Position numbers and translations under genes: made by a program. Of a stretch of 64,000 nt of DNA, positions 8,395 through 64,000 are shown one piece after another. The DNA is from Okamejei kenojei (taxonomy: Eukaryota). The stretch covers positions 15,314,001-15,378,000 of the forward strand of contig CM069160.1 of NCBI GenBank assembly GCA_035221665.1, in the 5' to 3' direction. The notes below the pieces were generated by a model that saw nothing but the letters and a program-made list of their open reading frames with translations, did not search any database and was not told the origin of the DNA. The first letter of the stretch is position 1. Every line of letters starts with the position of its first letter.

Positions 8395-9570
8395 ACAGAG
8401 TACTGGAGTAACTCAGCGGGTCAGGCAGCATCTGTGGAGAACATGGATAGGTGACGTTTCACAGAGTGCTGGAGTAACTCAGCGGGTCAGGCAGCATCTG
8501 TGGAGAACATGGATAGGTGACGTTTCACAGAGTGCTGGAGTAACTCAACGGGTCAGGCAGCATCTGTGGAGAATCAATCAACCTTTATTGTCATCTTGCA
8601 AAGCAACAGTTGTCCAGTGCGAAATGAGAAGACTTTTCCCAGGGAATACCAGAGCATCGCACATAAAGCTTAAACATTTCACACATAAATAAAAATAATA
8701 AAAACAATCCAGTCCCTGATAAAAACAATACAACAGTTAAAAGTGCAGGTAAAAAAACCCAGCAACAAGTAAAAACATTCATAAATTGCCCAGGGCAGCT
8801 GATTTAAGTGGCCAGTGCCAGAGTTTCTTATTAAATTGTCAGTGCAAAAAAGCAGCAGCATCAGGTGGATGACTGTTTAGCAGCCTCACAGCCCGTGGAA
8901 GGAAGCTGTTTAATGCCTGGTTGTCCGGGCTTTGATGCTGCGGAATCTCTTGCCTGATGGCAGGAGATCCAGGTTTGTGTGGTGTGTGTGGGTGGGGGGG
9001 GGGGGGGGGGGGGGGGGCAGTCTGTCCTTTGCGATGCTCGGTGCTTTTTTCAGGCAGCGGCTCTGGAACAGTTCTTGTACCGAGGGCAGGGAGACGCCAA
9101 TGATCCTCTCTGCTCCCCTCACTACCCTCTGCAGAGCCTTTCCGTCTGAGCAGTTGCAGTTGGAGTACCGCATGTTAATGCAGGACGTGAGCACAGACTC
9201 CACCGTGCCCCTGTAAAAAATCCCGAGGATGTTGGCGGGGAGTGAGGCCTGTTTGAGTTTCCTCAGGTAGTGCAGTCGCTGATGGGCCCGTTTCACAATC
9301 CCAGTGTTGTTCCTGGAACAGGTGAGACTGACTGTGATTTGCACTCCGAGGGACTTTATGTTCCCCACTCTCTCTCTGGATAGGTGACGTTTCACAGAGT
9401 GCTGGAGTAACTCAGCGGGTCCGGCAGCATCTGTGGAGAACATGGATAGGTGACGTTTCACAGAGTGCTGGAGTAACTCAGCGGGTCAGGCAGCATCTGT
9501 GGAGAACATGGATAGGTGATGTTTCACAGAGTGCTGGAGTAACTCAGCGGGTCAGGCAGCATCTCTGGAG
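8395..9570. repeat. 66-bp tandem repeat (~6 units) interrupted by a Rex1 element
   Basis: Unit acagagtgctggagtaactcagcgggtcaggcagcatctgtggagaacatggataggtgacgtttc at 8395-8573 and 9378-9570. Confidence 0.85.
8572..9375 (-). mobile_element. Rex1/Babar-clade LINE 3' fragment
   Basis: KRAHQRLHYLRKLK...FYRGTVESVLT...LQRVVRGAERIIG...LLPSGKRFRSI; ends aataaaggtt(gatt)n. Confidence 0.85.
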
Positions 9571-10121: not shown

Positions 10122-10379
10122 AGCTTTTATCACTGCATCGAGTGACAACGTGTTCCTCGGCAAAAACAAGCAGGGCAAATGTTTAATCAATAAGTCTGGG
10201 CGATTAGGGAAGAATTATTGACGGTGGGTGGGACGACCGATAGTTGCAATCTCTGACACACACTCACACACACACACACTGACTGATGCGACTGCAGAAG
10301 TAAAAATCCCCACAGCGTTGAACAAGTGATTAGACATGTTTGTATAAACCCCCAAGACATAGGGCGACACAGTAACGGT

Positions 10380-13343
10380 AAATAGTAAGATTAAACCGAG
10401 GAGTAACGATGAGGGATTACCCCCGCCTGGTGCTGGACACGGCATACCACAAGCAGCGGCATGAAAAACACAGACATAATAGCCAGTAAGAAGTAAGGCT
10501 CAACATAGATTTAGAACTACCAGACATTTATTTTATGAGGGTCGGGTCGTGGAGGGCACAATCCCTCATCGTTACTCCTCATAAATAAACGATCAAACTT
10601 CGACTGGTAAGTTCTTGTTTAATCTTTACTATTTTACTTCGGAGTCACGTGACACTACGTAAGATTTTGAAGCGTTTCACGACATACGACACTCTGTCAT
10701 TCAACACAGAATGAGCAAAATACACACATTTTTTCCCCAAACATTGCCTCAAGTTATGGAGATAAATTATTTCACATAATTAAAAGATGTAATGACCTCA
10801 CACACAAATATCAATTGATATATATAATTTGATGGTATGAACAAAGCAACAATTATAGAGAACCCAACACTCCGTGGAATCACACACCATGACTGGTTCC
10901 ATTTAATTTAATATTTATTTTACACCCTCCTGCGGCCTTGAATCTTTGCTCGAGCGGCTCATCCTGTGCCATTCCTGTGAAGTATTCACCTCCTTAACAG
11001 AGTGATTTTCCACATTTTCACTTTCCACTGAGTGTTATTCAATTTTTAACCAGCTAGAATACATTTCTCTAGAACATCAGTTTTTTACTGAACTAATGTG
11101 TTTTTTTTTTTATTGTGATAAGTAGTGCTGTCTCATCACCACAGAGACTCTTACACACATATCATCGATGTTCACACACACACACAATTTAAGGCCGACA
11201 GGATATGCTTATAGGGTTTACCTTGGTTTCAGCTCGGGCTTGGTCTGCTTTGTTTGGTAAATTATAACATATATGATAATGTAATCTGTATCCATATACA
11301 ATTATAACATAATATTTGCAGTGTTTGCACTCTTATATGATACAGCATTATTTCTTTCAATGTTAACTTTTTTTGAATCATTGATAGAATTGGCCATTGC
11401 AAAGCAATTCAGGACTATATTGATCTCCAGACATGTATTGAATTTTGGACACATATATATACATATATTTATATTCTACACATATATCCCTTTTCATTCA
11501 TATTACAAGAACCCATAATTTTCTTGGTTAGTATATTGTCCGTAAATAGGACGATAAACACTGGAAGCGAGCCCATTATTGGCATCAATTAGATACTCGA
11601 GAAAATGCAATGCACAAGGAACTCACATATATCTAAGATGACAAATAACACTGTATACAGACTTCAATTTCTTATAAAAATATTGTTTTTTTAAACTTAT
11701 TTCTGCAAATTGCAGTATAAAACTTCTTTATACCATAAATTATTTTATTGTTATGATGTTATATTATTTATTTAAACATTTCATAGACTTCTGTTGACCA
11801 TCAAACTGTTGTAACAACCTGCAGATAGTCACATATTTTCATGTCATGGATGCACTTTGTACAACAATAAATTACACACTATGAATCATCACAAGTGGTT
11901 CACACATCACTCAATATTTATGAAAACCATGATGATCCGTTTGGGCCACCAACAATGCCTCCGGCAGTGTCCTGCTACATTTTCATCAGACACTGCCCTA
12001 TCAGACAAAAATGAGGAACACACACATTTTTCCTCATGGAGAGAAACAGCATCCACCTTTCCTGTTCTTGGTTTACCCACGAGAACATTTGAAAGATCTT
12101 CTGTGATTTAATCTGTATACCAGATTAAACGTAGTATTCCATATTAATGACAATGTATTTTCCCCCTTAATTTGTTGTCTCCGATCACATTGTCTCTTCT
12201 TAGAGATAACAGCTGGACTAAAACACATAGAATATGCCACATACTGTTTACTCCAGGCCCATGATATTATTTTACGCTTATATGTGAGCCACACTCTCTC
12301 TGGTATTGTTCACCTTGATATGGACATGGACACTTCATAATAGAACAATCATATTTAATCCTCTCTTATACTTTAATAATTAATACAAAGGATTTGAGAA
12401 ATTTCTTAGGACAATCCATCAATTACCTGGTATTATTGTCAAGTCCCAACAAGAGACGTCAATCATTTTTATAGAAATAGAATTGAAATATGCCATTCTT
12501 ACCCAAATATTCACAGAAGCTGTACCATCATCTGTTAATATGGCTTCAGCTTGCAATAGTGCCTGCATATACAGCCCTTGTGAAAATCCCTTTTTTTTCC
12601 AGTTTTCTTTTTTATCCATTACTTTATAATGGGGTATTTGCATAAGCCTCTCACAAAGGCATTCACAATTCTTATAAAGCTTGTTTTCCTCTTTTGGAGC
12701 TTTATTTACTCTTTTCCTAAATGGCACTCCTTTTCTAATGGAGGGACAAAGTCTGTCAACAAAGCAATGAGACATATTTGTTCATGGAACAATTTTCCCA
12801 TCTCTTATGGTGCTGAATTTCTCCTAAATAAAGAATATAATTTATGACATTTTTGCATGCCTAACAACATAGGCTTTATGTGATGGGTCAGGTCCTTGCC
12901 TTTCAACAGGCTTGTAATTGCAGCACTAATTTGCAGCTGACTCTTTATAACTTCCAATTTAAATGTGATCAAGATAAACCCATGACCACCTCATTAATGC
13001 AAGTGTTGATCTTTTATCAGTACAATTGTTCTTCCAGTAAAACAAGCCTTGAAACTGGTTTTTATCCTTTAGACAATGTTTTAACTTGCACCGCTTGACC
13101 CATTTTAATAAATTTCAAGCACCTGTAATATTTGATTAACACTTTGTTAATAACAACTGTATTTCAATGTTGAAGATGTTTCCATTTTAATAAATTGTTC
13201 TTACACTGTGAAAGTGTATATAAAATGATGTTTTGTATGGTTTATACCATCAAATCCTTACACTGAGGTAATTTTATAATATATATATATATGTACGTAC
13301 CCCTTCTTTATTGGAGTTACTTTTGGGTGCAAACCTAAAATCA
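10380..13343 (-). mobile_element. DIRS1-like element, copy 1 (5'-truncated, damaged right terminus)
   Basis: Reverse-complement homologue of 18955-22180 with different flanks; ICR at ~10557-10665; deletions in the right end. Confidence 0.85.
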
Positions 13344-13414
13344 ATTAGGAGACCAAAACTGTGCAAAATACTCCAGATGTGGTCTCACCAGAGCCCAATA
13401 CAACTGCAAGTCGT

Positions 13415-13790
13415 TTTACCTTTATTTTAGTTTGTTTTTGTGTCCAGTTTGTGCGTTTACCATGGCGTCAGCAGTTCACAAACCAGAGCCTTTGGTGTTT
13501 GATGGCGACATCGCCAAGCGATGGGACATCTTTGATGAAGATTTCACTGTGTATGTGCATGCGTTGCACGCTGTAGTCGCTCCGGATGTTCGTGCCTCTA
13601 TTCTCCTTCACCTGGCAGGCACAGAGGCTGCTCGATGTGCCAGAAGATTTCATGATCAACCGGCCCAGTTCAATGCTGCTGATGTCCAGATTGTTCCGGC
13701 GGAATCCATTCAAGACCCTGAATGCCTGCCTCATCAGGTTCCAACAGCTATGGAGTTACGCATTCATCTTGTAATGGAGCGCGCCATGCA
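13415..13790 (+). mobile_element. Gypsy-type LTR retrotransposon gag N-terminal fragment; inverted copy at ~63270-63640
   Basis: MASAVHKPEPLVFDGDIAKRWDIFDEDF...ILLHLAGTEA resembles the P-L-F-G-N..W..F..LLH..G gag N-terminus. Confidence 0.6.
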
Positions 13791-13814
13791 ATTCATTCGG
13801 ACCAACCGGAGAAA

Positions 13815-13936
13815 AAACCCACGTGGGTCACGGGAGAAACGTACAAACTCCGCACAGACAGCTCCAGTGGTCAGGATTGAACCAGGATCTCCGGCGCTGT
13901 GAGGCAGCAACTCTACCGCTGCGCCACCGTGCCGCC
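13815..13936 (-). mobile_element. HE1-type SINE 5' part; inverted copy at 63116-63242
   Basis: A and B boxes plus start of the V core. Confidence 0.75.
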
Positions 13937-14121
13937 CTTAGGTTGACGTTGAGAGGGTCAACAAGTAACAGGAACCTGAAGGGCAACTTTATTCACACAT
14001 AGAATGGTGGGTGAGTGGAACAAGCTGCCAGAGGAGGTAGGTGAGGCAAGTCATAAGTGATAGGAGCAGAATTAGGCCATTCGGCCCATCTAGTCTACTC
14101 TGCCATTCAATCACGGCTGAT

Positions 14122-14404
14122 CACGGTGGGGCAGCGGTAGAGTTGCTGCCTCATAGCGCCGGACACCCGGGTTCGATCCCGATTACGGATGCTGTCTGTA
14201 CGGAGTTTGTACGTTCTCCCTGTGCTCTGCGAGTGTTTTCTCCGAGATCTTCGGGTTCCTCCCGCACTCCAAAGCCGTACAGATCTGTAGGTTAATTGGC
14301 TTGGTAAATGTGAAAATTGTCCCAAGTGGGTGTAGGGTGGTGTTAGTGTGGGGGGATCGCTGGTCGGCGCGGACCCGGTGGGCCGAAGGGCCTATTTCTG
14401 CGCT
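14122..14404 (+). mobile_element. HE1-type V-SINE; inverted copy at 62615-62929
   Basis: cacggtggggcagcggtagagttgctgcc...ggttcgatcc, V core and tail. Confidence 0.85.
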
Positions 14405-14989
14405 NNNNNNNNNNNNNNNNNNNNNNNNNNNNNNNNNNNNNNNNNNNNNNNNNNNNNNNNNNNNNNNNNNNNNNNNNNNNNNNNNNNNNNNNNNNNNNNN
14501 NNNNNNNNNNNNNNNNNNNNNNNNNNNNNNNNNNNNNNNNNNNNNNNNNNNNNNNNNNNNNNNNNNNNNNNNNNNNNNNNNNNNNNNNNNNNNNNNNNNN
14601 NNNNNNNNNNNNNNNNNNNNNNNNNNNNNNNNNNNNNNNNNNNNNNNNNNNNNNNNNNNNNNNNNNNNNNNNNNNNNNNNNNNNNNNNNNNNNNNNNNNN
14701 NNNNNNNNNNNNNNNNNNNNNNNNNNNNNNNNNNNNNNNNNNNNNNNNNNNNNNNNNNNNNNNNNNNNNNNNNNNNNNNNNNNNNNNNNNNNNNNNNNNN
14801 NNNNNNNNNNNNNNNNNNNNNNNNNNNNNNNNNNNNNNNNNNNNNNNNNNNNNNNNNNNNTAGGCAGCGTTCAACGTTCATGCCAATGACGTCACACATA
14901 TGTTCCCGAATCACATTTACATTAAAAAACTCAATTTTAATCAAATTCTTGAGGTTACATTTACAAAAATCATCGTGATTTTCATTGTG

Positions 14990-15400
14990 GGGGGGCGGGG
15001 GGAGGGGTTGGGGATATGGGGGAGGGGAGGAGGGGGGGGGCAGGGGCATTACAGGAAAGAGGAGGGGTTAGGGAGGGTAGAGCGGTTATGGAGGGAGGGA
15101 GTGACTGAGGGTAGGGGAGAAGGAGAGGGAGGGAGAGGTGAGGGAGGGAGTGGAGGAGGAGAGAAGAGGGGAAAGAAGAGGGAGGATGGGAGAGCTGGGG
15201 GATGAGGGGGGAATGGAGGAGGATTAGGGGTGGGAAAGGGGATTGGTGAGGTAATGGAGGAGGAGGATGGGGAAGAGGGGGGAGGGGAGGGTGGGGGTGA
15301 GGGGAGGAAGCATAGGAGGGTTGGTGGAGGGTGGGGAGAAGGGGGATAATGGAGGACTAGAGGACTGAAGAGGGAGAGTGTGATGCATTGGGGTGGATGA
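14990..15400 (+). repeat. Polypurine G-rich low-complexity tract; complement at 61430-61860
   Basis: Many GGG/GGA runs; G-quadruplex or triplex potential is inferred. Confidence 0.8.
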
Positions 15401-15431
15401 TTGCAACTTTCATGTGGTCCACCCTGTTCCG

Positions 15432-17248
15432 ACTGCTTGCTGCCTAATTGTTTGCCTCGCCTTTTTTAAAAAAAGTTTCTGTTCACAAAATAAATTTTGG
15501 TTGTCAGGTGGCTGTTTGCTGCACAATTGTTTGCCTCGCCTTTAAAAAAAAAAGTTTGTGTTCACAAAATGGATTTTGGTTGTCAGGTGGCTGCTTGCTG
15601 CCCAATTGTTTACCTCTCCTATTTTTCCAAATGTTTGTGTTCACAAAATGGATTTTGGTTGTCAGGTGGCTGCTTGCTGCCCAATTGTTTGTCTCGCCTT
15701 TTTAAAAAAAAGAGTTTGTGTTCACAAAATGAATTTTGGTTGTCAGGTGGCTGCTTGCTGCCCAATTGTTTTCCTTGCCTTTTTAAAAAAGAGTTTGTGT
15801 TCACAAAATGAATGTTGGTTGTCAGATGGCTGCTTGCTACCCAATTGTTTGACTCGCCTTTCTTTAAAAAAGTTTGTGTTCACAAAATGGATTTTGGTTG
15901 TCAGGTCGCTGTGGCCCAATTGTTTGCCTCGCCTTTTTGAAGAGTTTGTGTTCATAAAATGGATTTTGGTTGTCAGGTGACTGCGGCCCAATTGTTATGC
16001 CTCGCCTTTTTGAAGCGTTTGTGTTCACAAAATGGATTTGGTTGTCAGGTGGCTGCAGCACCCTCCCTTTTTAAATTTGTGTTGCACTCCTTGTTGCCCT
16101 CGCCTTTTTAAAAGCATGTGTCACTAAATGAATTTTTGGTTGTCACCAAATGAGGTTTGTGTTCACAAAAAAAAAAAAGGTTTGGATTTACGGGCCCAAT
16201 TATTTGCCTCACATTTCTTTTAACCAGTAGGTGGTCTGGCTGCTTGCTGCCCAATTGTTTGCCTTTTTTAAAGGAGTTGTGTTCACAAAATGGATTTGGG
16301 ATGGTAGGTGGCTGCTTGTTGCCCAATTGTTTGCCTCGCCTTTTTAAAAAGCATGTGTTCACAAAATGGATTTTGGTTGTCAGGTGGCTGCTTGCTGCAC
16401 AATTGTTTGCCTTGCCTTTTTAAAAAAAAAAAGTTTGTGTTCACAAAATGAATTTTAGGCTGTCAGGTGGCTACTTGCTGCCCAATTATTTGCCTCACAT
16501 TTCTTTTAACCAGTTCGAATTCACAAAATGAATTTTGTTTGTCAGGTGGCTGCTTGCTGCCCAATTGTTTGCCTCGCCTTTATAAAAAAAAGTTTTTGTT
16601 CACAAAATAAATTTTGGTGGTCAGGTGGTTGCTTGCTGCCCAATTGTTTGCCTTGCCTTAAAAAAAAAAAAGTTTGTGTTCACAAAATGGATTTTGGTTG
16701 TCAGGTGGCTGCTTGCTGCCCAATTGTTTGCCTCGCCTATTTAAAAAAGGTTTTCTGTTCACAAAATAAATTTTGGTTGTCAGGTGGCTGCTTGCTGCCC
16801 AATTGTTTGCCTCGCCTTTTTTTAAAAAAAAGTTTTCTGTTCAAAAAATTAATTTTGGTTGTCAGGTGGCTGCTTGCTGCACAATTGTTTGCCTCGCCTT
16901 TAAAAAAAAAAAGATTGTGTTCACCAAATGAATTTTGGTTGTCAGGTGACTGCTTGCTGCTCAATGTTTGCTTTGCCTATTTAAAAAAAAGTTTGTGTTT
17001 ACAAAAAAGGATTTGGGTTGGTAGGTGGCTGCTTGCTGAACAATTGTTTGCCTTGCCTTTAAAAAAAAAGTTTGTCATCACAAAATGAATTTTGGCTGTC
17101 AGGTGGCTGCTTGCTGCCCAATTGTTTACCTCGCCTTTTTTTCCAAAAGTTTGTGTTCACAATATGGATTTTGGTTGTCAGGTAGCTGTTTGCTTCCCAA
17201 TTGTTTGCCTCACCTTTTTAAAAAAAGAGTTTGTGTTCACAAAATTAA
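15432..17248 (+). repeat. 73-79-bp tandem satellite, left part
   Basis: Unit agtttgtgttcacaaaatggattttggttgtcaggtggctgcttgctgcccaattgtttgcctcgcctttttaaaaaa. Confidence 0.95.
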
Positions 17249-20200
17249 TTTTACTTCGGAGTCACGTGAGTGACTACGTGAAGAAGCCCCGCCTGGCGCT
17301 GGAACAGCATTACGTCGACGCTGACAGCAGAGCAAGAGCTGCAGAGTCAGCTCCTCGACAGCGGTAGGTACGGGCCCGCAGGTAAGTGCAGTGGAAAACA
17401 TTTTCCGTGGCTGGTATTGAATACCAGAATTTAAAACTAATTTAAAAGTAAAAAATAAGTAAAAGTTAAAATAAAAGGAAAATACTTTATATGAAAAACA
17501 ACGGAGTTTAAAAGAACGTCCTAAGGGGAGCGATCGGAACGGGAGATTACGGAGCCGGTTCCGATACCGGTGGCCGTCAAAATTACGTTAGAAAGATTTT
17601 TTAGTCGCTCCACAAACTTTTGCGCTTGGGGGGTGGGGGGGGGAAATTTTTAAAGTCAGAAAGGCCATAATTTAAAATTCAATAAAAGGCCTTCAGACTA
17701 AAAAAGCTTTATGGCTTGAAAAATTAATGGAAAAAAGATTCAAAAAATAAAAATAAAGTAAATAAAGAATTCAAGCCAAAAAATGGGTAAAGGCCCAAAA
17801 CAATTTCCTAACCTACCCCATAAAAGGGATTTCATATATTCTAATATATATGATGAAATATGGTGGGAATATCTACCTCATACTATTTGAAGGTAGTCTC
17901 CTTGAGGAAAAAAAATCAGGGAGTAACAAGGGCAGTAAAAATAAAATGGAAAACTGACCTTAAAAATGCACTGATAGTGGTGGCTGGTCATGAAGTACCC
18001 ACCACAGCTCCAGTAATATATATATATATATATAGTACAGGTGTACAACACCTGAATAAGAAGTGAGGCCATGGAAAATAACCATGGAAAACAAAATTAA
18101 TTGGTCTCTCACTAAAGCTGTTATGATTAAAACAGCAGAATAATATTAAAACTTTTTATGTTTTATTTAAGTACACTTCAGCACCAAATATATATAGAAG
18201 TGTACTAGGTTTGATACCTGAATGTATGAGTGAGGCCATGAAAAGTAAATATGGAAAAAAAAAAATAATTGGCCTCACCTAAAGCTGTTATGGTGAAACA
18301 GCAGAATATGATAAAACTTTTAAGTTTATAAAGATATCAACGGTGAATCCGGTATGATATCCATGTCTCAATTAGATGGAGATATAAGGAAATACGATTT
18401 TAAAAGTATTACAAACTGGTGCATGGTCATTTCCATTCAATGGAAAACAAATAAAATATTGTGCAAATAACCAATACATTTGAAGTAAAATTAATTGCCA
18501 TCAGTTTGTGGAGCTCAATGGAAGAAATATATAATATTTGGGACAAATTGCATCTAGATTTGCTGATCAATACAAATCAGGTTATGTTAAACTCTGATTA
18601 TTATGGAATAAAACTGCCTTATGATTATTCAAAATATTGATTACAAAAGAACAGATTATTGGTCTTTAAACTTTGGGGGGGGGGGGGGGGGAATTATTGA
18701 TCCAATGTAAAGATTTGATATTGGATCAAAACAAAGGCAGAAGTATGATAAATAAAACATATCAAACATAGCCTTATCCATATAATTGGAAAAAAAAAAG
18801 GCTTGAAGTAGGTTGAAGGGGTTGCAAACAAACTGTTACAAAATAAATTCATGAAATCTACGATTGTGGGGGATTACAGCTGTATTAAAACTAGGGACTA
18901 CAAAAAAATTGTAGAAAGGGATTGGTCACCTGTATAAGAAACCTTTAAAAATCTGATTTTAGATTTGCATCCAAAAGTAACTCCAATAAAGAAGGGGTAC
19001 GTACATATATATATATAATATATAAATAAAATTACCTCAGTGTATAAAGTTGTGATGGTATACCATACAAATATCATTGATATACACTTTCACAGTGTAA
19101 GAAACATTTTTATTAAAATGGAAAATCTTCAACATTGAAATGCAGTTGTTATCAAACAAGTGTTAATCAAATTATTACAGGTGCTTGAAATTAATTAAAA
19201 TGGGTCAAGCGGTTGCAAGTTAAAAACATTATCTAAAAAGGATTAAAACCAGTTCAAGGCCGTTAAACCAGAATACTGGAAGAAATATTGTACTGATAAA
19301 AGATCAACACTTGCATAATGAGGACATGGTCATGGTTTATCTTGATCACATTTAAATTGGAGGTTATAAAGAGTCAGCTGCAATTTAGTGCTGCCAATTA
19401 CAAGCCTGTTGAAAGGCAAGGACCCTGACCCATCACATAAAGCCTATGTTTTAGGCATTGCATAATATTCACAAATTAATATTCTGGTTTTAGGAGTAAT
19501 TCAGCACCATAAGAGATGGGAATTGTTCCATGATACAAATATGTCTCATTGCTTTGTTGACATATTTTGTCCCTCCATTAGAAAGGGCCTAGGTAAAAGA
19601 AATAAAGCTCCAAAAGGAGGAATACAAGAGCTTATAAGAATATGTATGCCTTTGTGAGAGGCTTATGCAAATACCAAATGATACATTATCATTATTAAAG
19701 TAATGGAAAAAAAAGGGGTTCACAAGCTGCTTCAACTATTAGCTATGCACGCTGTTGCAAGCTGAAGCAAGTATTAACAGATGATGGACAGCTTCTGTGT
19801 TATTTGGGTAAGATAAGAATATTATCTATTCTTATAAAAATAATTGATACGTCTCTTGTTGGGGACTATGGACAATTAATACCATGTAATTGCAAATGTA
19901 TTGTCCTAGAAAGAAATTTCTCCAAATATTTGTATTAATTATTTTGAAGTATAAGGAGTTATGGATTAAATATTGATTGTTCTATTATGGAAGTGTCCAT
20001 GTATATCAAGGTGAACAATACCACGGCAGTGGCATATATTAAATCACATAAGATAAGTAAAATAATAATCATGGGGTTATTGAGTAAACAGATGTGGCAT
20101 ATTCTAAAATGTTTAGTCCAGCTGTTTATCTCTAAGAAGAGACAATGTTATCGGAGACAAAAACAAATTAAGGGGGGGAAACTACATTGTCATTAATATG

Positions 20201-22180
20201 GATTACTTACGACAAAAATTAATCTGGTTGTATACAGATTAAATCACCGATCTTTCAAATGTTCTCGTGGGTAAACCAAGAACATGAAAGGTGGATGCTT
20301 TTCTCTCAATTAATGAGGAAAAATGTTCTTTTATGTTCCTCATTTTTGTTGATAGGGCAGTGTCTGATGAAAATGTAGCAGGACACTGCCAGAGGCATTT
20401 TGGTGACCAAAACGGATCTTCATGGTTTTCATAAATATTGAGTGATGTTGAACCACTTGTGAGCTGATTCATAGTTGCAGTAATTTATTGTTGTACAAAG
20501 GATCCATGACATGAAAATATGAATTGACTATCTGCAGGTTGACCAGACTATTATAACAGTTTGATGGTCAATGAAGTCTATGAATGTTTAAACTAATATA
20601 AAACATAACAATAAAATAATTATGTGTAAAGAAGTTGTTATACTGCAATTTTGCAGAAATAAGTTTTTTAAAAAAAAATAATTAAAAAAAAAAAGAAATT
20701 GGAAGTCTGTGTATACAGTAAAGTTATTTGTCATATTAGATATATGTGAGTTCCTTGTGGATTGCATTTTTTTCTGAGTATCTAATTGATAGAGCCAATA
20801 ATAGGGCTCAGAGTGTTTATCGTCCTATTTACGGACAATATACTAATCAAGAAATTATCGGGTTCATTCGTAATATCCCGATATGAAAAGGGATATATAT
20901 GTAGATATAAATATATATATATAATTCTGTCCCAAAATTGCAATACATTGTCTGGAGATCCTATATAGTCCTGAATTGCCTTAGGCAATGGACTCCAATT
21001 CTATTAATGATTCAAAAAAGTTAACTTTGAAAGTAATAATGCTGATGACTTTTTATCAATATAAGAGTGCAAACATTGCAAATATTACGTTATAATTGTA
21101 TATGGATACAGATTACATTATCATATATGTTTATGAATTTACCAAAAACAAAGCAGACCAAGAAGAGCTGAAACCAAGGTAAACCTATAAGCATATCCTG
21201 TCGGTCTTAAATTATGTGTGTGTGTGAACATTGATGAAATATGTTGAAGTAAGTAAGTAAGTCTCTGTGGTGATGAGACGCACTACTTATTACACACAAT
21301 ACACAATACATTACACACAATACAATTAAAACACATTAGGTTTCAGTAAAAACTGATGGTTCTAGAGAAATGTATTCTAGATGGTTAAAAATTGAATAAC
21401 ACTCAGTGGAACTAGACACTGAAATGTGGAAAATCACTCTGTTAAAGAGGTAGATACATTCACAGGAATGGCACAGGATGAGCGCACGAGCAAAGATGCA
21501 AGGCCACAGGAGGGTGTAAAATAAATATTAAATCAAATTGAACCAGTCATGGTGTCAGGATTGGACACAGAGTGTTGGGTTCTCTATAATCGTTGCTTTG
21601 TTCATACCATCAAATTATATATATCAATTGCTATATTTTGTGATTAAACCTGCCTTTCATTGGAAAGGGCATACTTTTATTCTTTATAACGTGATTAATT
21701 TTATCACATAACTTGAGGCAATGTTTTGGGGGAAAAAATAGGTGTTATTTTGCTCATTACTGTGTTGAATGAGCCGGGACTGTCGTATGGAACAAATTCT
21801 ACGACATAAAAAACACAGAAAGCTTCAAAATCTTCACGTAGTCACTCACGTGACTCTGAAGTAAAATAGTAAGATTTTAAACGAGAAATCTTACCAGTTC
21901 GAGTTTGATCGTTATTTTTTGAGGAGTAACGATGAGGGGATTACGTGCCCTCCATCCCGACCTCATAAAATAATTGATCATCTGGTAGTTCTAAATCTAT
22001 GTTGAGCCTTACTATCTTACTCCGGCTATTATGTTGTGTGTATTTCATTGCCGCTGTGCTTTGAAAGTATGCCGTTCAGCGCCAGGCGGGGCTTCTTCAC
22101 GTAATCCCTCATCGTTACTCCTCATTAAAATAACGATCAAACTTTGAACTGGTAAGTTCTCGTTTTAATCTTACTATTTT
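17249..22180 (+). mobile_element. DIRS1-like tyrosine-recombinase retrotransposon, copy 2: complete termini, decayed ORFs
   Basis: ITRs at ~17275-17310 and ~22069-22102. ICR 21831-21947 is complementary first to the left end, then to the right end, joined through AAAA. Flanked by tttt. Remnants: RT (KME ~19155; MVYLDH 19332-19349), RNase H (NNTTAVAYI ~20014), methyltransferase-like region (~20240-20400), YR (RVQTL ~21068, KQT ~21151, HSVK ~21435). Confidence 0.9.
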
Positions 22181-25100
22181 GGTTGTCAGGTGGCTGCTTG
22201 CTGCCCAATTGTTTACCTCGCTTTTTTTCCAAATGTTTGTGTTCGCGAATATGGATTTTGGTTGTCAGGTAGCTATTTGCTTCCCAATTGTTTGCCTCGC
22301 CTTTTTTAAAAAAGAGTTTGTGTTCACAAAATGAATTTTGGTTGTCAGGTGGCTGCTTGCTGCCCAATTGTTTGCCTCGCCTTTTTAAAAAAAGTTTATG
22401 TTCACAAAATGAATTTTGGTTGTCAGGTGGCTGCTTGCTGCCCAATTGTTTGCCTCGCCTTTTTAAAAAAGGTTTATGTTCACAAAATGAATTTTGGTTG
22501 TCAGGTGGCTGCTTGCTGCCAAATTGTTTGCCTCGCCTTTTTTAAAAAATGTTGTGTTCACAAAATGGTTTTTGGGTTGGTTGGGTTTCAATTGGCTGCG
22601 GGTCCCGAATTTGTTTGCCTGTTCGCCTTTTTGAAAGTTTGTGTTCATATAAAATGGATTTTGGTTGCAGGTGGACGGCGGCCCAATTGTTTTGCCTCGC
22701 CCTTTTAAAAGAGTTTGTGTTCACAAAATGGAATTTGGTTGTCAGGTGGCTGCGGCACAATTGTTTGCCTCACCTAAAAGAGTTTGTGTTCTCAAAATGG
22801 ATTTGGATTGGTAGGTGGGCTGCTTGCTGCCCAATTGTTTGCCTCGCCTTTTAAAAGTGAGTTTGTGTTCACAAAATGGAATTTGGTTGTCAGGTTGGCT
22901 GCGGCACAATTGTTTGCTCTCACCTTTTTAAAGAGTTTGTGTTCCACAAAATGGATTTGGATTGGTAGGTGGCTGCTTGCCTGCCCAATTGTTTGCCCGC
23001 TTTTTAAAGAGTTTGTTTCACAAAATGGATTTTGGTTGTCATTTTTGGCTGCTTGTTGCCCAATTGTTTGCCTCGCCTTTTTAAAAAAAAGTTTGTGTTC
23101 ACAAAATGGATTTTATTTGTCAGGTGGCTGCGGCAACAATTGTCTGCCTCGCCTTTTTAAAGAGTTGTATTCACAAAATAGATTTTTGTTGTCATTTGGC
23201 TGCTTGCTGCCCAATTGTTTGCTCGCCTTTTAAAAAAATGTTGTGTTTACAAAATGAATTTTTGTTGTCAGGTGGCTGTTTGCTGCCAAATTGTCTGCCT
23301 TACCTTTCTTTAAAAAAAAATCAGCTTGTGTTCACAAAAATGGATTTTGGAGTGACTGGCCCATTGTTTGGCCGAAGAGTTTTGGTGTTTAGGGATTTTG
23401 GATGACCCAATTGTTTGCTCGCCTTTTTAAAGAGTTTGAGTTCACAAAATGGGTTTTGGTTCGACAGGCGGCTGCGTCACAATTGTTTGCTCGCCTTTTT
23501 AAAGAGTTAGTGTTCACAAAAATGGATTTTGGTTGTAAGTCGGCTGCGGGCCCAATTCTTTGCCTTGCCCTTATAAAGAGTTTGTGTTCACAAAATGGAT
23601 TTTGGTTGTCAGGCGGCTGCGGCCCAATATTTGGTTTTGCTTCGCTTTTTAAGAGTATGTGTTCACAAAATGGATTTTGGTTGTCAGGTGACTGTGGTCC
23701 AATTGTTTGCCTCGCTTTTAAAGCGTTGTGTTCACAAAATGCACTTGGGTTGGCAGGTGGCTGCTTGCTTCCCAATTGTTTGCCTCGCTTTTTAAAAAGT
23801 TTGTGGTCAGAAAATTGATTTGGTTGTCAGCTGACTGCAACCTATTGTTTGCTCGCCTTTTTGAAGAGTTTGGGTTCACAAATGGATTTTGGTTCTCAGG
23901 CGGCTGCAGCCAATTGTTTTGCCTGCCTTTTTAAAAGTTGTGTTCACAAAATGGATTTGGTTTTCAGGTGGCTGTGGCCCAATTGTTGTCTCGCCTTTTT
24001 AAAGAGATTGTGTTCACAAGATGGATTTTGTTTGACAGGCGTCCATGGCCCAATTGTTTGTCTTGCCTTTTTAAAGAGGTTGTGTTCACAAATGGGTTTT
24101 GGTTGACAGGCCGCAGTGTCACATTTGTTTCCCTCGCCTTTTTAAAGAGTTGTGTTCACAAAATGAATTTTGGTTGTAAGGCGGCTGTGGCCCAATTGTT
24201 TTCCTCGCCTTTTTTAGAGAGTGAGCGGTTGTGTTCTCAATTGGATTTGGTTGTCAGGCGGCTGCGGCCCCAATTGTTTGCCTCACCTTTTTAGAGAGTA
24301 TGTGTTCACAAAAATGGTCTTTGGTTGTTAGGTGGCTGCGGACCAATTGGTTTGCCTCGCCTTTTTAAAGAGTTTGTGTTCACAAAATGGATTTTGGTTG
24401 TCAGGTGGCTGCTTGCTGCCCAATTGTTTGCCTCGCCTTTTTAAAAAAAAAAAGTTTGTGTTCACAATGGATTTTGGCTGTCGATGTCTGCGACCCATTG
24501 TTTGCCTCACCTTTTTAAAGAGTTTGTGTTCACAAAATAGATTTTGGTTGTCAGGTGGCTGCGGCACAATTGTTTGCCTCACCTTTTTAAAGAGTTTCTG
24601 TTCACAAAATGAATTTGGGTTGGCAGGTGGCTACCTGCTCCCCAATCGTTTCCCTCGCCTTTTTAAAAAGTTTGTGTTCACAAAATGATTTTTTGTTGTC
24701 AGGTGGCTGCTTGCTGCCCAATTGTGTGCCTCACCTTTTTTAAAAAAAAGTTTGTGTTCACATGAATTTTGGTTGTCATGAGGTGGCTGCGGCCCAATTG
24801 TTTGTCTCGCCTTTTTGAAGTGTTTGTATTCACAAAATGGATTTTGGTTGTCAGGTGACTGCGGCCCAATTGTTTGCCTCGCCTTTTTGAAGAGTTTGTG
24901 TTCACAAAATGGGTTTTGGTTGTAAGTGCGGCTGCGGCGCAATTATTCGCCTCGCCATTTTAAAGAGTTTGTGCTCACAAAATGGATTTTGGATGTCAGG
25001 CGGCTGCGGCCCAAATGTTTGTCTCGCCTTTTTAAAGAGTCTGTGTTCACAAAATTGATTTTGGTTGTCAAGTGGCTGCTGGCCAATTGTTTTCCTTGCC

Positions 25101-25947
25101 TTTTAAAATAAATGCTGTGTTCACAAAATGAGTTTTTGTTGTCAGGTGGCTGCTTGCTGCTCAATTGTTTGCCTCGCCTTTTTTAAAAAATGTTTGTGTT
25201 CATAAAATGAATTTTGGTTGACAGGTGTTGCTTGCAGCCCAAATGATTGGCTCGCCTTTTTGAAGAGTTTGTGTTCTCAAAATGGATTTTGGTTGGCAGG
25301 CGGCTGCGGCCCAATTGTTTCCCTCGCTTTTTTAAAGAGTTTGTGTTCACAAAATGGATTTTGATTGTCAGGTGGCTGCGGCCCAATTGTTTGCCTTGCC
25401 TTTTTAAAGAGTTTGTGCTCACAAAATGGATTTTGGTTGTCAGGTGGCTGCGGGCCAATAGTTTGCCTCGCCTTTTTTAAAAGTTTGTATTCACAAAATG
25501 GATTATGGTTGTCATTTGGCTGCCTGCTGCCCAATTGTTGCCTCGCCTTTTTAAAGAGTTTGTGTTCACAAAATGGATTTTGGTTGGCAGGTGGCTAGGG
25601 CCCAATTGTTGCCCTTGAGTTTTTAAAGAGTTTTTTTTGTTTTTTTTTCTTTACAAAATGGATTTAGGTTGTCAGGTGGCTGCGGCAAAACTGTTTGGCT
25701 CGCCTTTTTAAAACGGTTGCGTTCACAAAATGGATTTTGGTTGTCATTTGGCTGCTTGCTGCCCAAATGTTAGCCTCGCATTTAAAAAAAAATGTTGTGT
25801 TCACAAAATAAATTTTAGTTGTCAGGTTATTGCTTGCACCCAATTGTTTGCTCCACCTTTTTGAAGAGTTTGTGTATGCCCCCAAATATGGATTTTGGTT
25901 GTCTGGTGGCTGCGGCCCAAATTGTTTGCCTTGCCTTGGCTTTTAAA
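22181..25947 (+). repeat. 73-79-bp tandem satellite, right part
   Basis: Same unit, with a shorter gctgcggcccaattg variant; resumes exactly in register after the DIRS element. Confidence 0.95.
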
Positions 25948-57259: not shown

Positions 57260-60200
57260 CTAGACCAAGTGTGGACCCGTTGGTCCCCGTCCCCCAACGC
57301 AATATTCCACCACTGACCCATAGCCCACAACTGCGCAGGTCACATAGTGACACGAGTCACGGCAACACTCCCCCAACTGTGCAGGTGCGGCCGGCAAGTG
57401 TGAGCGCGATTGCGACATTTTCAAAGTTCAAAATGGCAATAACCTGTAAAATATATGATCAACTAAACTAAGTGGGACGCATTGGGTCCCAGCATCACAC
57501 GGGGGGGCTGGTCACCAACGCAATATTCCACCTCTCCACCAATTCCAATATTGCTTGCCAGTGGGGGGGGGCCCTTTCTGTTGCGCTAGAATGGGTGTTG
57601 CGGGCCGAAGGCTGGAAGCCAACTGTTGCAATGATTTTAAAAGCCAAGGCAAGGGAAATAATTTGGCCGCAGCCACTAGACAACCTCTTCAAAAAGGTGA
57701 GGCAAACAATTGGGCAGCAAGCACTCACCTGACAACTAAAATTCATTTTGTGAACACAACATTTTTTTTTAAATGCGAGGCAAACAATTGGGCAGCAAGC
57801 AGCCAAATGACAACCAAAATCCATTTTGTGAACACAAACTTTTTAAAAAGGCGAGGCAAACAATTGGGCCGCAGCCACCTGACAACCAAAATCCATTTTG
57901 TGAACAAAAACTTTTTTTAAAGGCGAGGCAAACAATTGGGCCGCAGCCACCTGACAACCAAAATCCATTTTGTGAACACAAACTCTTTAAAAAGGCAAGG
58001 CAAACAATTGGGCCGCAGCCGCCTGCCAACCAAAATCCATTTTGTGAACACAAACTCTTTAAAAAGGCGAGACAAACAATTGGGCCACAGCCGCCTGCCC
58101 ACAAAAACCATTTTGTGAATACAAACTCTTTAAAAAGGTGAGGCAACAATTGGGCAGCAAGCAGCCAAATGACAACTAAAATCCATTTTGTGAACACAAA
58201 CTTTTAAAAAAGGTGAGGCAAACTAATGGGCCGCAGTCACCTGACAACCAAAATCCATTTTGTGAATACAAACACTTAAAAAGGTGAGGCAAACAATGGG
58301 GCCGCAGCCATTCTACAGCCAAAATCCATTTTGTGAACACAAACTTTTTTTTAAAAAGGCAAGCAGCCATCTCACAACCAAAATCCATTTTGTAAACACA
58401 AACTTTTTAAAAAAGCTAGGCAAACAATTGGGAAGCAAGCAGCCACCTGCCAACCCAAATCCATTTTGTGAACACAAACTCTTTAAAAAGGCGAGGCCAA
58501 CAATTGGTCAGCAGCCACCTGACAACCAAAATCCATTTTGTGAACACATACTCTTTAAAACGACGAGGCAAACAATTGGGCTGCAGCCGCCTGAGAACCA
58601 AAATCCATTTTGTGAACACAAACATTTTAAAAAGGCGAGGCAAACAATTGGGAAGCAAGCAGCCACCTGCCAACCCAAGTCCATTTTGTGAACACAAACT
58701 CTTTAAAAAGGCGAGGCAAACAATTGGGCTACGGATGCCTGTCAACCAAAATCCATTTTGTGAACACAAACTCTTCAAAAAGACGAGCCAAACAATTGGG
58801 CCGCAGTCACCTGACAACCAAAATCCATTTTGTGAACACAAACACTTCAAAAAGGCAAGACAAACAATTGGGCCGCCGCCACCTGAGAACCAAAGTCCAT
58901 TTTGGAAACACAAACTTTTTTCTAAAAAGGCGAGGCAAATAATTGGGCAGCAAGCAGCCTCATGACAACAAAAATTCATTTTGTGAACACAAACTCTTTT
59001 TCAAAAAGGCGAGGCAAACAATTGGCAGCAAGCAGCCACCTTATAACCAAAATTCATTTTGTGAACACAAGGTTTTTTTAAAAAAAGGTGAGGCAGACAA
59101 TTTGACAGCAAACAGCCACCTGACAACAAAAATTCATTTTGTGAACACAAACATTTTTTTAAAAAGGCGAAAACAATTGGGCAGCAAGCAGCCACCCGAC
59201 AACCAAAATTCATTTTGTGAAAACAAACTTTTTTTTAAAAAGGCGAGGCAAACAATTGGGCAGCAAGCAGCCAAATTACAACAAAAATCCATTTTGTGAA
59301 TACAAACTCTTTAAAAAGGCGAGGCAAACAATTGGTGCTGCAGCCACCTGACAAATAAAATCCATTTTGTGAACACAAACTTTTTTTAAAAAAGGCGAGG
59401 CAAACAATTGGGCAGCAAGCAGCCAAATGACAACCAAAATCCATTTTGTGAACACATGCTTTTGAAAAAGGCGAGGCAAACAATTGGGCAACAAGCAGCC
59501 ACCTACCAACCCAAATCCATTTTGTGAACACAAATTCTTTAAAAAAAGGTGAGGCAAACAATTGGGCCGCAGCCGCCTTACAACCAAAATACATTTTGTG
59601 AACACAAACTCTTCAAAAAGGCGAGGCAAACAATTGGGCCGCAGCCACCTGACAACCAAATTCCATTTTGTGAACACAAACTCTTTTAAAAGGCGAGGCA
59701 AACAATTGGGCAGCAAGCAGCCACCTGACAGCCAAAATTCATTTTGTGATGACAAACTTTTTTTTTTAAAAGGCAACGCAAACAATTGTTCAGCAAGCAG
59801 CCACCTACCAACACAAATCTATTTTGTGAACACAAACTCTTTAAAAAGGCGAGGCAAACAATTGTGCCACCTGACAACCAAAATTTATTTTGTGAACACA
59901 AACTCTTCAAAATGGCAAGGCAAAGCAATTAGGCAGCCACCTACCAACCCAAATCCTTTTTGTGAACACAAACCTTTTTTTAAATAGGTGAAGCAAACAT
60001 TGGGCAGCATGCAGCCACCAGACAACCAAAATTCATTTTGTGAACACAAACATTTTTTTTTTTTTTAAAGGCAAGGCGAACAATTGGGCAGCAAGCAACC
60101 ACCTGACAACCAAAATTTATTTTGTGAACAGAAACCTTTTTTTAAAAAGGCGAGGCAAACAATTGGGCAGCAAGCAGCCACCTGACAACCAAAATCCATT

Positions 60201-62076
60201 TTGTGAACACATGCTTTTTAAAAAGGCGAGGCAAACAATTGTGCAACAAGCAGCCACCTACCATCCCAAATCCATTTTGTGAACACAAACTCTTTAAAAA
60301 AGGCGAGGCAAACAATTGTGCCGCAGACCCCACTTGATAACCAAATTCCATTTTGTGAACACAAACTCTTTTAAAAGGCGAGGCAAACAATTGGGCCGCA
60401 GCCACCTGACAACCAAAATCCATTTTGTGAACACAAACTCTTTAAAAAGGTGAGGCAAACAATTGGGCCGCAGCCGCCTTACAACCAAAATACATTTTGT
60501 GAACACAAACGCTTCAAAAAGGCGAGGCAAACAATTGGGCCGCAGCCACCTGACAACCAAAATACATTTTGCGAACATAAACTTTTTTTAAAAAGGCGAG
60601 GCAAACAATTGGGCAGCAAACAGCCACCTGACAGCCAAAATCCGTATTGTGAACACAAACCTTTGGAAAAAAAGGCGAGGTAAACAATTGGGCAGCAAGC
60701 AGCCACCTGACAACCAAAATTCATTTTGGGAACTCAAAATGGTTAAAAGAAATGCGAGGCAAATAATTGGGCAGCAAGCAGCCACCTGACAGCCAAAATT
60801 CATTTTGTGATGACATACATTTTTTTTTAAAAGGCAAGGCAAACAATTGTTCAGCAAGCAGCCACCTACCAACACAAATCTTTTTTGTGAACACAAACTC
60901 TTTAAAAAGGCGAGGCAAACAATTGTGTCAACCAAAATTTATTTTGTGAACACAAACTCTTCAAAATGGCAAGGCAAATAATTAGGCAGCAAGCAGCCAC
61001 CTACCAACCCAAATCCTTTTTGTGAACACAAACTTTTTTTTAAATAGGCGAAGCAAACATTGGCCAGCAAGCAGCCACCAGACAACCAAAATTCATTTTG
61101 TGAACACAAACTTTTTTTTTTAAAGGCAAGGCAAACAATTGGGCAGCAAGCAACCACCTGACAACCAAAATTTATTTTGTGAACAGAAACCTTTTTTTTA
61201 AAGGCGTGGCAAACAATTGGGCAGCAAGCAGCCACCTGACAAACAAAATTCATTTTGTGAATTCAAACTGGTTAAAAGAACTGCAAGGCAAATAATTGGG
61301 CAGCAAGTAGCCACCTGACAGCCTAAAATTCATTTTGTGAATACAAACTTTAAAAAAAAAGGCGAGGCAAACAATTAGGCAGCAAGCAGTCGAAACAGGG
61401 TGGACAACATGAAGGTTGCAATCATCCACCCCAATGCATCACACTCTCTCTCTTCAGTTCTCTCGTCCTCCATTAATCCCCCTCTCCCCACCCTCCTCCA
61501 CCCTCCTCTGCTTCCTCCCCTCACCCCCACCCTCCCCTCCCCCCTTCTTCCCCTCCCTCCTCCATTACCTCGGCCATCCCCCTTACCTACCCCTATCCTC
61601 CTCCATATCCCCCTCATCCCCAGCACTCCCATACTCCCTCTTCTTTCCCCTCTTCTCTCCCTCCTCCAACCCCTCCCCTCTCTCCCTCTCCTTTCCCCTA
61701 CCCTCAGTCACATCACCTCCCTCCATAACCGCTCTACCCTCCCTATCCCCTTCCTCTTTTCTGTAATGCCCCGAATGCCCCCCCCTCCTCGCGCCCCCAC
61801 TCCTCACCCCTCCCCCATACCCACCCCCGAATCTTCCCCCCATCCTCCTTGACCGCCCCCCTTTCATGCGGGTTATGAAAATAACGCATGATTTTGCACC
61901 CGTAAATGTAACCTCAAGAATTTGATGAGAGGATCGAAATTGAGTTTTTGAGATATGTATGTAAATGACCCTGATTCGGGAAAAACAATACCGTCAACCG
62001 TGACGTCATTGTGGATGACGCTCGACCGCTACGCCACCCCCTAAATGATCCTCCCCCCCCTAGCCGGGGGACACAG
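57260..62076 (-). mobile_element. Helitron-like element, paralogous copy without DIRS
   Basis: Hairpin ggacc-cgtt-ggtcc (57273-57286) lies 9 nt from terminal CTAG (57263-57260), which is followed by T. Confidence 0.65.
57635..61392 (-). repeat. 73-79-bp satellite array, uninterrupted copy
   Basis: Reverse complement of the 15432-25947 unit. Confidence 0.95.
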
Positions 62077-63707: not shown

Positions 63708-64000
63708 TGATTTTAGGTTTGCACCCAAAAGTAACTCCAATAAAGAAGGGGTACGTACATATATATATATATATTATATAAAATTACCTCAGTGTAAGGA
63801 TTTGATGGTATAAACCATACAAAACATCATTTTATATACACTTTCACAGTGTAAGAACAATTTATTAAAATGGAAACATCTTCAACATTGAAATACAGTT
63901 GTTATTAACAAAGTGTTAATCAAATATTACAGGTGCTTGAAATTTATTAAAATGGGTCAAGCGGTGCAAGTTAAAACATTGTCTAAAGGATTAAAACCAG
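63708..64000 (+). mobile_element. DIRS copy 1 paralogue (runs off window)
   Basis: Near-identical reverse complement of 13055-13343, with the same CR1 junction. Confidence 0.85.

What the first reader, a model, noticed from the sequence alone, without database searches (positions are those of the whole stretch)
17249..22180. DIRS element with intact cis termini and fully decayed ORFs that appears recently inserted
Seen: the ITRs and ICR remain almost perfectly complementary to both ends, while RT, RNase H and YR survive only as short scattered motifs (YLDH where YLDD is expected, HSVK where HSTR is expected). It sits at the tttt of a satellite monomer (cacaaaattaa-tttt-ggttgtcagg), which resumes in register, and it is absent from the paralogous array at 57635-61392. 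Known: DIRS1 elements replicate through an ICR-templated circle and integrate by tyrosine recombinase at T-runs. Inferred: a near-full-length non-autonomous DIRS lineage mobilised in trans, with selection only on its termini.
Basis: partly seen in the sequence, partly recalled or inferred. Interest (0 to 1): 0.8.

Follow-up and report, generated by a model that had tools for sequence, protein, structure and literature searches.

The report
Non-coding DIRS retrotransposon copy in satellite
This is a 4.9-kb DIRS-type retrotransposon that keeps its end-joining signals but encodes no proteins, descends from an ancestor that was already non-coding, and so was probably copied by enzymes from other elements; this kind is known, and the claim of a recent insertion is not established.

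Summary
The element is real, at 17253-22180 on the + strand (4928 nt). It has the full DIRS1-type end architecture. There are short inverted terminal repeats. An internal complementary region (ICR, 21831-21947) reads as the circle junction: right end, ATTTT, left end. The left end matches the ICR 31/32. The right end matches about 90% (3 mismatches, 5 indels), so "almost perfect" is overstated.

ATTTT flanks both sides, and the satellite monomer resumes in register with no duplication.

The interior has 93-97 stops per frame. No protein homology is detectable by Pfam, word search or HMMER against 1.84 billion proteins, so the RT, RNase H and YR "motifs" remain unverified.

The key new result concerns a second, independent, 5'-truncated copy at 10375-13343 (-). 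It shares 62-70% of copy 1's stop codons in all three frames, and it shares a decayed U2 snRNA fragment. Their common ancestor was therefore already non-coding, which supports a non-autonomous lineage.

"Recently inserted" is not shown. The internal mismatches (~3% substitutions) equal the divergence of the inverted duplication (2.3%). The two satellite arrays are not collinear, so absence from the other array says little.

First readers of this scan noted the same pattern in other windows of this genome. Non-autonomous DIRS elements are known (TOC1).

The parts
17248..17252 (.). ATTTT of the satellite target, left copy of the 5-nt core shared by the target and the element's circle junction
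   Evidence: ATTTT precedes the left end, ends the right end, and is written as AAAAT at 21863-21867 in the ICR
17253..17284 (+). Left terminus (L), complementary to the first part of the ICR; it also folds into a small hairpin of its own
   Evidence: 31/32 complementary to 21831-21862; 0 matches expected by chance
17253..17310 (+). Left inverted terminal repeat
   Evidence: aligns with the reverse complement of 22069-22131 (57 of 65 columns, with the ATTTT core included in the aligned span 17248-17310); inner 36 columns have 1 mismatch and 1 gap
17311..17640 (+). CpG-rich 5' leader (CpG observed/expected about 1.0-1.7), with a splice-donor-like CAG|GTAAGT at 17379-17387; candidate cis-acting region
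   Evidence: CpG profile; RNA fold z -3.4; sequence
17641..21780 (+). AT-rich non-coding interior (A 0.38, T 0.30, G 0.18, C 0.13; CpG o/e 0.13-0.34) with 93-97 stops per frame. It contains the strings YLDH 19338-19349, NNTTAVAYI 20014-20040 and HSVK 21435-21446
   Evidence: no protein family or homologue found
19788..19887 (+). Decayed copy of the 5' ~100 nt of U2 snRNA inside the interior, shared with copy 2
   Evidence: Rfam RF00004, 25.1 bits, below the gathering score of 46; E 0.038 over the element; the same segment in copy 2
21831..21947 (+). Internal complementary region: L' 21831-21862, AAAAT core 21863-21867, R' 21868-21947. Its reverse complement reads as the circle junction: right end, ATTTT, left end
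   Evidence: (minus-strand DNA of 21820-22180 folds as a long panhandle, z -14.1)
22069..22131 (+). Right inverted terminal repeat
22098..22180 (+). Right terminus (R), complementary to ICR R'; it ends in ATTTT (22176-22180)
   Evidence: (78 of 87 columns)
10375..13343 (-). Copy 2: an older, 5'-truncated relative with its own ICR (about 10560-10660) and a deleted right end (about 10375-10440), at an unrelated site. It matches copy 1 positions 1702-4871
63708..64000 (+). Copy 3: the paralogue of copy 2 in the other arm of an inverted segmental duplication, truncated at the same base
15433..17252 (+). Satellite array (79-nt monomers) to the left of the insertion
22181..25937 (+). Satellite array to the right of the insertion (79-nt, then 72-nt monomers)
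57680..61389 (-). Inverted paralogous satellite array without the element

Best explanation
Copy 1 (17253-22180) belongs to a non-autonomous DIRS1-type retrotransposon lineage.

Shown here:
- It has the complete cis apparatus of a DIRS1-like element: inverted terminal repeats, and an ICR lying just inside the right repeat. The first 32 nt of the ICR pair with the left end and the remaining ~85 nt pair with the right end. On a single-stranded cDNA the two ends would therefore be held side by side.
- It has no coding capacity.
- That loss predates its divergence from an independently inserted relative.

Inferred:
- A transcript of a non-coding source copy was reverse-transcribed by proteins of coding DIRS elements elsewhere in the genome.
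- The cDNA was closed into a circle at the ICR-defined junction (...CTTACT-ATTTT-ACTTCGG...).
- A tyrosine recombinase supplied in trans recombined the junction's ATTTT with an identical ATTTT in a satellite monomer. This left the core on both sides and no target duplication.
- The insertion is moderately young, about the age of the local inverted duplication or younger. It is not demonstrably recent.
For: Architecture. This matches the published DIRS-1 layout, in which the first 33 nt of the ICR correspond to the left end and the remaining 55 to the right end (PMC7192593). It also matches integration at a short NTT/TTT junction sequence without target duplication (PMC3266345).

No ORFs: (93-97 stops per frame in the interior, against 119 expected from base composition).

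The ancestor was already non-coding. Shared stops with copy 2 number 45/73, 48/69 and 44/71 in the three frames. Every 300-nt window has at least one shared stop in every frame. The longest interval free of shared stops is 333 nt.

A shared decayed U2 fragment.

The two copies are independent insertions. Their flanks differ, and copy 2 has its own ICR and right end. They are 13% diverged.

The insertion is clean and in register, with a 5-nt core.

Trans action of the DIRS-1 reverse transcriptase, and the ICR being essential, are experimental results in Dictyostelium (PMC7192593).

Leads only, not tested: several first-reader notes describe 4.8-4.9-kb DIRS copies with preserved ends and ruined interiors, and DIRS copies with ORFs, elsewhere in this genome.
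Against: - Only two independent loci could be compared, and only over the 3' two-thirds, because copy 2 lacks positions 1-1701.
- No partner with matching ends was seen.
- The right end/ICR match is only about 90% with 5 indels, so this particular copy may no longer be mobilisable.
- The 3' end is not better conserved than the interior between copies 1 and 2, so selection on the termini is not demonstrated.
- That the interior derives from DIRS genes rests on three short strings in the expected order. No search gave a significant protein match.
Confidence: 0.7

Rival explanations
1. An ordinary autonomous DIRS copy that inserted intact and decayed where it sits. The ends look good only because they are short.
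For: The ends are not perfect: about 90% on the right, with 5 indels. Copy 1's internal pairs show about as much substitution (about 3.3%) as the local duplication (2.3%). Some stops are private to copy 1: 21-28 per frame.
Against: About two-thirds of its stops in all three frames sit at the same columns in an independently inserted copy that is 13% diverged. The shared U2 fragment lies inside the former coding region. About 3% of divergence in place cannot by itself produce 93-97 stops per frame, near the 119 expected from base composition.
Confidence: 0.07
2. A non-autonomous element whose good ends are not maintained by selection. Instead they are renewed by recombination or template switching with a coding DIRS during reverse transcription, giving a chimera of a decayed interior and borrowed ends.
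For: There are sharp composition boundaries at about 17640 and about 21650: CpG o/e is about 1-1.7 outside and 0.13-0.34 inside. The 3' end diverges from copy 2 at least as much as the interior does, as expected if ends are swapped between subfamilies.
Against: No coding partner is available for comparison. The composition contrast could be native to DIRS elements, with CpG-rich promoter and leader regions and an A-rich body. Copy 2 shows the same contrast.
Confidence: 0.15
3. On timing only: the element was already in the satellite before the inverted duplication and was later lost from the other arm by unequal exchange between monomers. It would then be neither recent nor arm-specific by insertion.
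For: The arrays differ by about 23 monomers and are not collinear. The reconstituted site matches its own array better (85-90%) than the other arm (84-86%), which shows homogenisation after the duplication. The internal pairs of the element are as diverged as the arms.
Against: Five substitutions in about 152 nt is a weak clock. Some end/ICR mismatches may be inherited rather than acquired after insertion. CpG o/e of at least 1 in the ends fits a fairly young copy, although copy 2, which predates the duplication, also keeps about 1.07.
Confidence: 0.3
4. Assembly or read error created the broken frames.
For: Many 1-3-nt indels and long G and A runs.
Against: The stops are shared by a second copy. 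Copies 2 and 3 agree closely with each other. The ends and the flanking satellite read cleanly.
Confidence: 0.02

Closest known systems
DIRS-1 of Dictyostelium discoideum (founding DIRS1-like element)
   Same: Inverted terminal repeats that differ at their outer ends. An ICR just inside the right repeat, whose first ~32-33 nt pair with the left end and the rest with the right end. A similar size (4.8 kb against 4.9 kb). Integration without target duplication (PMC7192593).
   Different: DIRS-1 encodes GAG, RT/RNase H and YR, and its ICR match is exact. This copy encodes nothing, its right-end match is about 90%, and its ITRs are much shorter (about 60 nt against about 330).
Vertebrate DIRS1-like families (XtDIRS2/3, DIRS-37_XT of Xenopus; TnDIRS1 of Tetraodon)
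   Same: Short ITRs with a few substitutions or indels between left and right. An ICR made of two parts. TTT/NTT at both ends with AAA at the junction (PMC3266345, PMC9210276). Here the core is (A)TTTT.
   Different: Those reference elements are 5.6-6.2 kb with three ORFs. In Xenopus 36 of 75 families show some degeneration of terminal repeats and/or ORF domains (PMC9210276). Here even the common ancestor of two copies lacks frames.
TOC1 of Chlamydomonas reinhardtii
   Same: A DIRS-order retrotransposon described as non-autonomous yet mobile (PMC9940879). It is the same kind of parasite-of-a-parasite.
   Different: Different kingdom and terminal arrangement. No sequence relation was tested.
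LARDs such as Dasheng (partner RIRE2) among LTR retrotransposons
   Same: Large, near-full-length non-coding derivatives that keep only cis signals and depend on a coding partner (cited in PMC9210276's reference list; the rest is my own knowledge).
   Different: They have direct LTRs, DDE integrase and target duplications. The element here is of the tyrosine-recombinase type.

Membership tests
DIRS1-like retrotransposons (order DIRS) | Inverted terminal repeats | tested here: met
   17253-17310 against 22069-22131; the inner core is 27/27 perfect
DIRS1-like retrotransposons (order DIRS) | Internal complementary region next to the right repeat, complementary to the outer left end and the outer right end, placed adjacent | tested here: met
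   21831-21862 pairs with the left end (31/32); 21863-21947 pairs with the right end (78/87 columns); panhandle fold z -14
DIRS1-like retrotransposons (order DIRS) | No target-site duplication; the same short T-rich sequence at both borders and at the circle junction | tested here: met
   ATTTT at 17248-17252 and 22176-22180, AAAAT at 21863-21867; the satellite monomer continues in register
DIRS1-like retrotransposons (order DIRS) | Encodes RT/RNase H (often with a methyltransferase-like domain) and a tyrosine recombinase | tested here: not met
   no ORF over 82 codons; no Pfam family and no homologue. Only the strings YLDH, NNTTAVAYI and HSVK occur in the expected order, recognised from memory, which is a lead and not a test
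Non-autonomous DIRS derivative (as TOC1) | Coding capacity already absent in the ancestor of separate insertions | tested here: met
   for element positions 1702-4924 only: shared stops in all frames in every 300-nt window. Shared U2 fragment
Non-autonomous DIRS derivative (as TOC1) | Several independent insertions with complete ends | tested here: inconclusive
   Two independent loci in the window, but copy 2 is 5'-truncated. More full-length copies are reported only in untested notes
Non-autonomous DIRS derivative (as TOC1) | A coding partner with matching ends in the same genome | not testable with these tools
   The rest of the genome cannot be read. Notes mention DIRS copies with pol and YR frames elsewhere
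Non-autonomous DIRS derivative (as TOC1) | Evidence of mobility (polymorphic insertions, transcripts, cDNA) | not testable with these tools
One search lists possible RNA runs holding 0.15 of the words, unverified

The most novel reading that the evidence does not exclude
The family is a currently or recently active vertebrate DIRS parasite that has kept its full ~4.9-kb length through long non-coding evolution. This would imply that length or RNA structure of the interior matters for copying, beyond the ~390 nt at the 5' end and ~530 nt at the 3' end. It would make the family a natural map of the minimal cis requirements of DIRS retrotransposition. The transversion-rich differences between copies (Ti:Tv 100:154, against 20:11 for in-place divergence) would then record replication errors of the DIRS machinery rather than genomic decay.
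Probability: 0.15. Interest if true: 0.55.

Novelty: new member of a known kind. Interest (0 to 1): 0.35.

Why it matters
DIRS elements are the least understood retrotransposon order, and their replication model rests mostly on one amoeba element. A vertebrate lineage that spreads without any genes of its own shows which parts are needed in cis: the ends, the ICR and perhaps the CpG-rich leader. It also shows that the DIRS proteins work in trans in animals too. For annotation, it warns that "dead-looking" DIRS copies with good ends need not be old. The concept is already established (TOC1, and Xenopus DIRS families with degenerate ORF domains or terminal repeats), so this is a well-documented example and not a new principle.

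Tried and rejected
- Pfam on ten stop-free pieces of the interior at E up to 10 gave only two chance hits, DUF5978 and TPK_catalytic.
- The word-based protein search with the 82-aa piece found no candidate.
- phmmer of the same piece against 1.84 billion representatives gave 0 hits.
- An exact look-up of ten ORFs of copies 1 and 2 in the 15-billion protein collection found none.
- The metagenome scan with the 22-nt left-end pattern gave one contig, unrelated beyond the 22-mer and taken as chance.
- Pfam on 16 larger ORFs of the window gave no DIRS reference protein. It found only Ig V-set exons, an ALKBH8_N hit and a weak zf-RVT hit.
- I looked for an orthologous empty site in the other array. 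No unique match exists.
- I tested whether CpGs in the 3' end are better shared between copies than interior CpGs. They are not: 8/21 against 11/22.
- I considered single-strand deaminase hypermutation of the cDNA with duplex-protected ends. I rejected it for three reasons. The + strand is C-poor rather than G-poor. The differences between copies are transversion-rich. The CpG-rich zones extend well beyond the duplex-forming segments.
- I used 22176 as the right border and corrected it to 22180. The four bases do not change any result.
Full report
**1. What is there**

Reading 16800-22700 shows a 79-nt satellite interrupted after ...CACAAAATTAATTTT (ending at 17252). The interruption begins ACTTCGGAGTCACGTG... 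and ends ...AATCTTACTATTTT at 22180. After that the satellite goes on with GGTTGTCAGG.

Joining the two flanks in a script gives a monomer that aligns to the satellite consensus with no gap at the join. The insertion is therefore clean and in register. ATTTT is present on both sides (17248-17252 and 22176-22180). I first took 22176 as the border, following the tandem-repeat table, and corrected it to 22180.

**2. Cis architecture**

The repeat finder, pattern searches (0 matches expected by chance) and pairwise alignments give the following.

- Left end 17253-17284 is complementary to 21831-21862, 31/32. The one mismatch is CGG against CAG, a CpG transition.
- Right end 22098-22180 is complementary to 21863-21947 in 78 of 87 columns (3 mismatches, 6 gap columns in 5 events).
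- Left repeat 17253-17310 pairs with right repeat 22069-22131. The alignment (which also takes in the ATTTT core, 17248-17310) has 57 of 65 columns matching. The core TACGTGAAGAAGCCCCGCCTGGCGCT is perfect.

Read in reverse complement, the ICR spells ...CTTACT-ATTTT-ACTTCAG..., that is right end, core, left end: the circle junction. The minus-strand DNA of 21820-22180 folds into a long panhandle (-92.7 kcal/mol, z -14.1), with the left-end-binding segment directly beside it.

This is the layout described for DIRS-1: the first 33 nt of the ICR correspond to the left end, the other 55 to the right end, and the ICR is essential for retrotransposition (PMC7192593). The ATTTT core fits the rule that DIRS1-like elements begin and end with an NTT/TTT trinucleotide complementary to the junction, and integrate by recombination with an identical genomic sequence without target duplication (PMC3266345).

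It is overstated for the right end.

**3. Interior**

Each frame of the element has 105-113 stops, and the longest open piece is 82 codons. In the interior (17641-21780) there are 93-97 stops per frame, against 119 expected from base composition alone.

The strings YLDH, NNTTAVAYI and HSVK are present in the order RT, RNase H, YR. I recognise them from memory as DIRS-like, but no search supports this:

- Pfam on ten pieces found nothing relevant.
- The word search found no candidate.
- phmmer against 1.84 billion representatives found nothing.

The statement that the interior is a decayed pol/YR region therefore remains an inference.

**4. Relatives in the window**

BLAST of the element against the window finds copy 2 at 10398-13343 on the minus strand. 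It matches element positions 1702-4871 (82% with gaps; 86-87% over ungapped columns). It has its own ICR and a right end carrying deletions, next to unrelated flanks.

BLAST also finds copy 3 at 63708-64000. Copies 2 and 3 are truncated at the same base and are nearly identical. They lie in the two arms of an inverted segmental duplication: 13055-14404 against 64000-62623, with 31 substitutions in 1343 sites (2.3%) and Ti:Tv 20:11. Copy 2 therefore predates that duplication and is an insertion independent of copy 1.

**5. Was the ancestor coding?**

I used a reference-free test. If the common ancestor of copies 1 and 2 had an open frame, stops in that frame should be private to one copy.

Instead, 45/73, 48/69 and 44/71 of copy 1's stops in frames 1-3 are stops at the same aligned columns in copy 2. 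Every 300-nt window has at least one shared stop in every frame. The longest stretch without a shared stop is 333 nt.

Both copies also carry the same decayed 5' domain of U2 snRNA. Copy 1's fragment is at 19788-19887 (Rfam U2, 25.1 bits, below the gathering score). Copy 2's segment appears, although Rfam did not call it.

The coding capacity over the 3' two-thirds was thus lost before the two insertions separated. At least one of them was copied from a non-coding source. This is the main support for a non-autonomous lineage. It agrees with note s1-880148 on this window, and I tested that claim here.

Trans action of the DIRS-1 reverse transcriptase on a truncated element has been shown experimentally (PMC7192593).

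**6. Are the ends under selection?**

CpG observed/expected is about 1.0-1.7 in 17253-17640 and about 0.9-1.3 in 21650-22180. In the interior it is 0.13-0.34, with GC 0.31. Copy 2 shows the same contrast. The window background is 0.54.

This shows that the ends have not decayed much where they sit. It could also be a native property of DIRS elements, with a CpG-rich promoter and leader and an A-rich body.

Between copies 1 and 2 the 3' end is not better conserved than the interior, and CpGs are not better shared there. Selection on the termini is plausible but not demonstrated. Renewal of the ends by recombination with a coding element is an open alternative.

**7. Age**

If the end/ICR and ITR pairs were exact at insertion, copy 1 has since gained 5 substitutions in about 152 compared positions (3.3%), three of them at CpG sites, and 6 indel events. 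That is no less than the 2.3% between the arms of the duplication.

The two satellite arrays have about 72 and about 49 monomers and are not collinear. The reconstituted empty site matches the other array at 84-86%, but other places in its own array at 85-90%. The arrays have therefore been homogenised separately.

Absence from 57680-61389 therefore does not date the insertion, and loss by unequal exchange is not excluded. "Recently inserted" is unproven. "About as old as the duplication, or younger" is what the data allow.

**8. An unexplained detail**

The differences between copies 1 and 2 in columns far from gaps are transversion-rich (Ti:Tv 100:154). The arms, which diverged in place, give 20:11. 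This may reflect alignment noise in AT-rich sequence, or a different mutation process during copying. I could not decide between these.

**9. Other data**

The run search found DNA contig runs of one organism holding 0.27 of the sampled words. It also found small runs guessed to be RNA holding 0.15.

First readers of this scan noted the same pattern (good ends, ruined AT-rich interior, 4.8-4.9 kb) in several other windows of this genome. A follow-up described a many-copy DIRS family carrying a U2 fragment. These are leads, apart from the parts I re-tested.

**10. Comparison and verdict**

The element meets every cis criterion of a DIRS1-like element. It fails the coding criterion, so it is a DIRS derivative and not an autonomous member.

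Non-autonomous DIRS elements are known: TOC1 (PMC9940879). In Xenopus, 36 of 75 DIRS-like families show some degeneration of terminal repeats and/or ORF domains (PMC9210276).

This is a new member of a known kind, of moderate interest.

Noticed in passing
window 19788-19887 (copy 1) and about 12440-12525 minus strand (copy 2): A decayed 5' ~100 nt of U2 snRNA sits inside the element interior and is shared by both copies (Rfam U2, 25.1 bits, below the gathering score of 46). This links them to the U2-carrying DIRS family of note s1-880319.
   Followed up: partly
window 13055-25937 against 64000-57680: A large inverted segmental duplication. Its unique part is 97.7% identical by substitutions. 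It carries copy 2/copy 3, a GA-rich tract and the satellite arrays, which have since diverged in monomer number (about 72 against about 49).
   Followed up: partly
window 1185-1631 (-), 2698-3105 (-), with inverted counterparts near 38087-41528: ORFs with immunoglobulin V-set domains (Pfam E 1e-10) in tandem and inverted duplicates. The window lies in an Ig-superfamily gene cluster.
   Followed up: no
window 17379-17387: Consensus splice-donor-like CAG|GTAAGT in the CpG-rich 5' leader of the element. This may relate to the notes proposing spliced expression of DIRS genes in this genome.
   Followed up: no
window 18024-18156 and 18188-18321: An internal direct duplication of about 133 nt (78% identical) in the 5' interior. 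There are also two similar long G-runs at 17626-17651 and 18673-18698.
   Followed up: no
copy 1 against copy 2 (alignment of 18954-22176 with 13343-10370): The substitution spectrum between the copies is transversion-rich (Ti:Tv 100:154). The duplication arms give 20:11. Unexplained.
   Followed up: partly
window 8394-8573 and 9377-9570: Two short arrays of the same 66-nt tandem repeat (97-98% matches) flank an ORF (8910-9461, minus strand) with a Pfam ALKBH8_N match.
   Followed up: no
window 44276-46041: Long (GTCAA)n/(AAGTC)n pentanucleotide arrays.
   Followed up: no
window 13432-13902 (+): A 156-aa ORF directly beside the truncation point of copy 2, with no Pfam match. It is possibly part of the element that truncated copies 2 and 3.
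   Followed up: no
L001 803-824: A metagenome contig shares only the 22-nt left-end pattern and nothing else. I took it as a chance match.
   Followed up: yes
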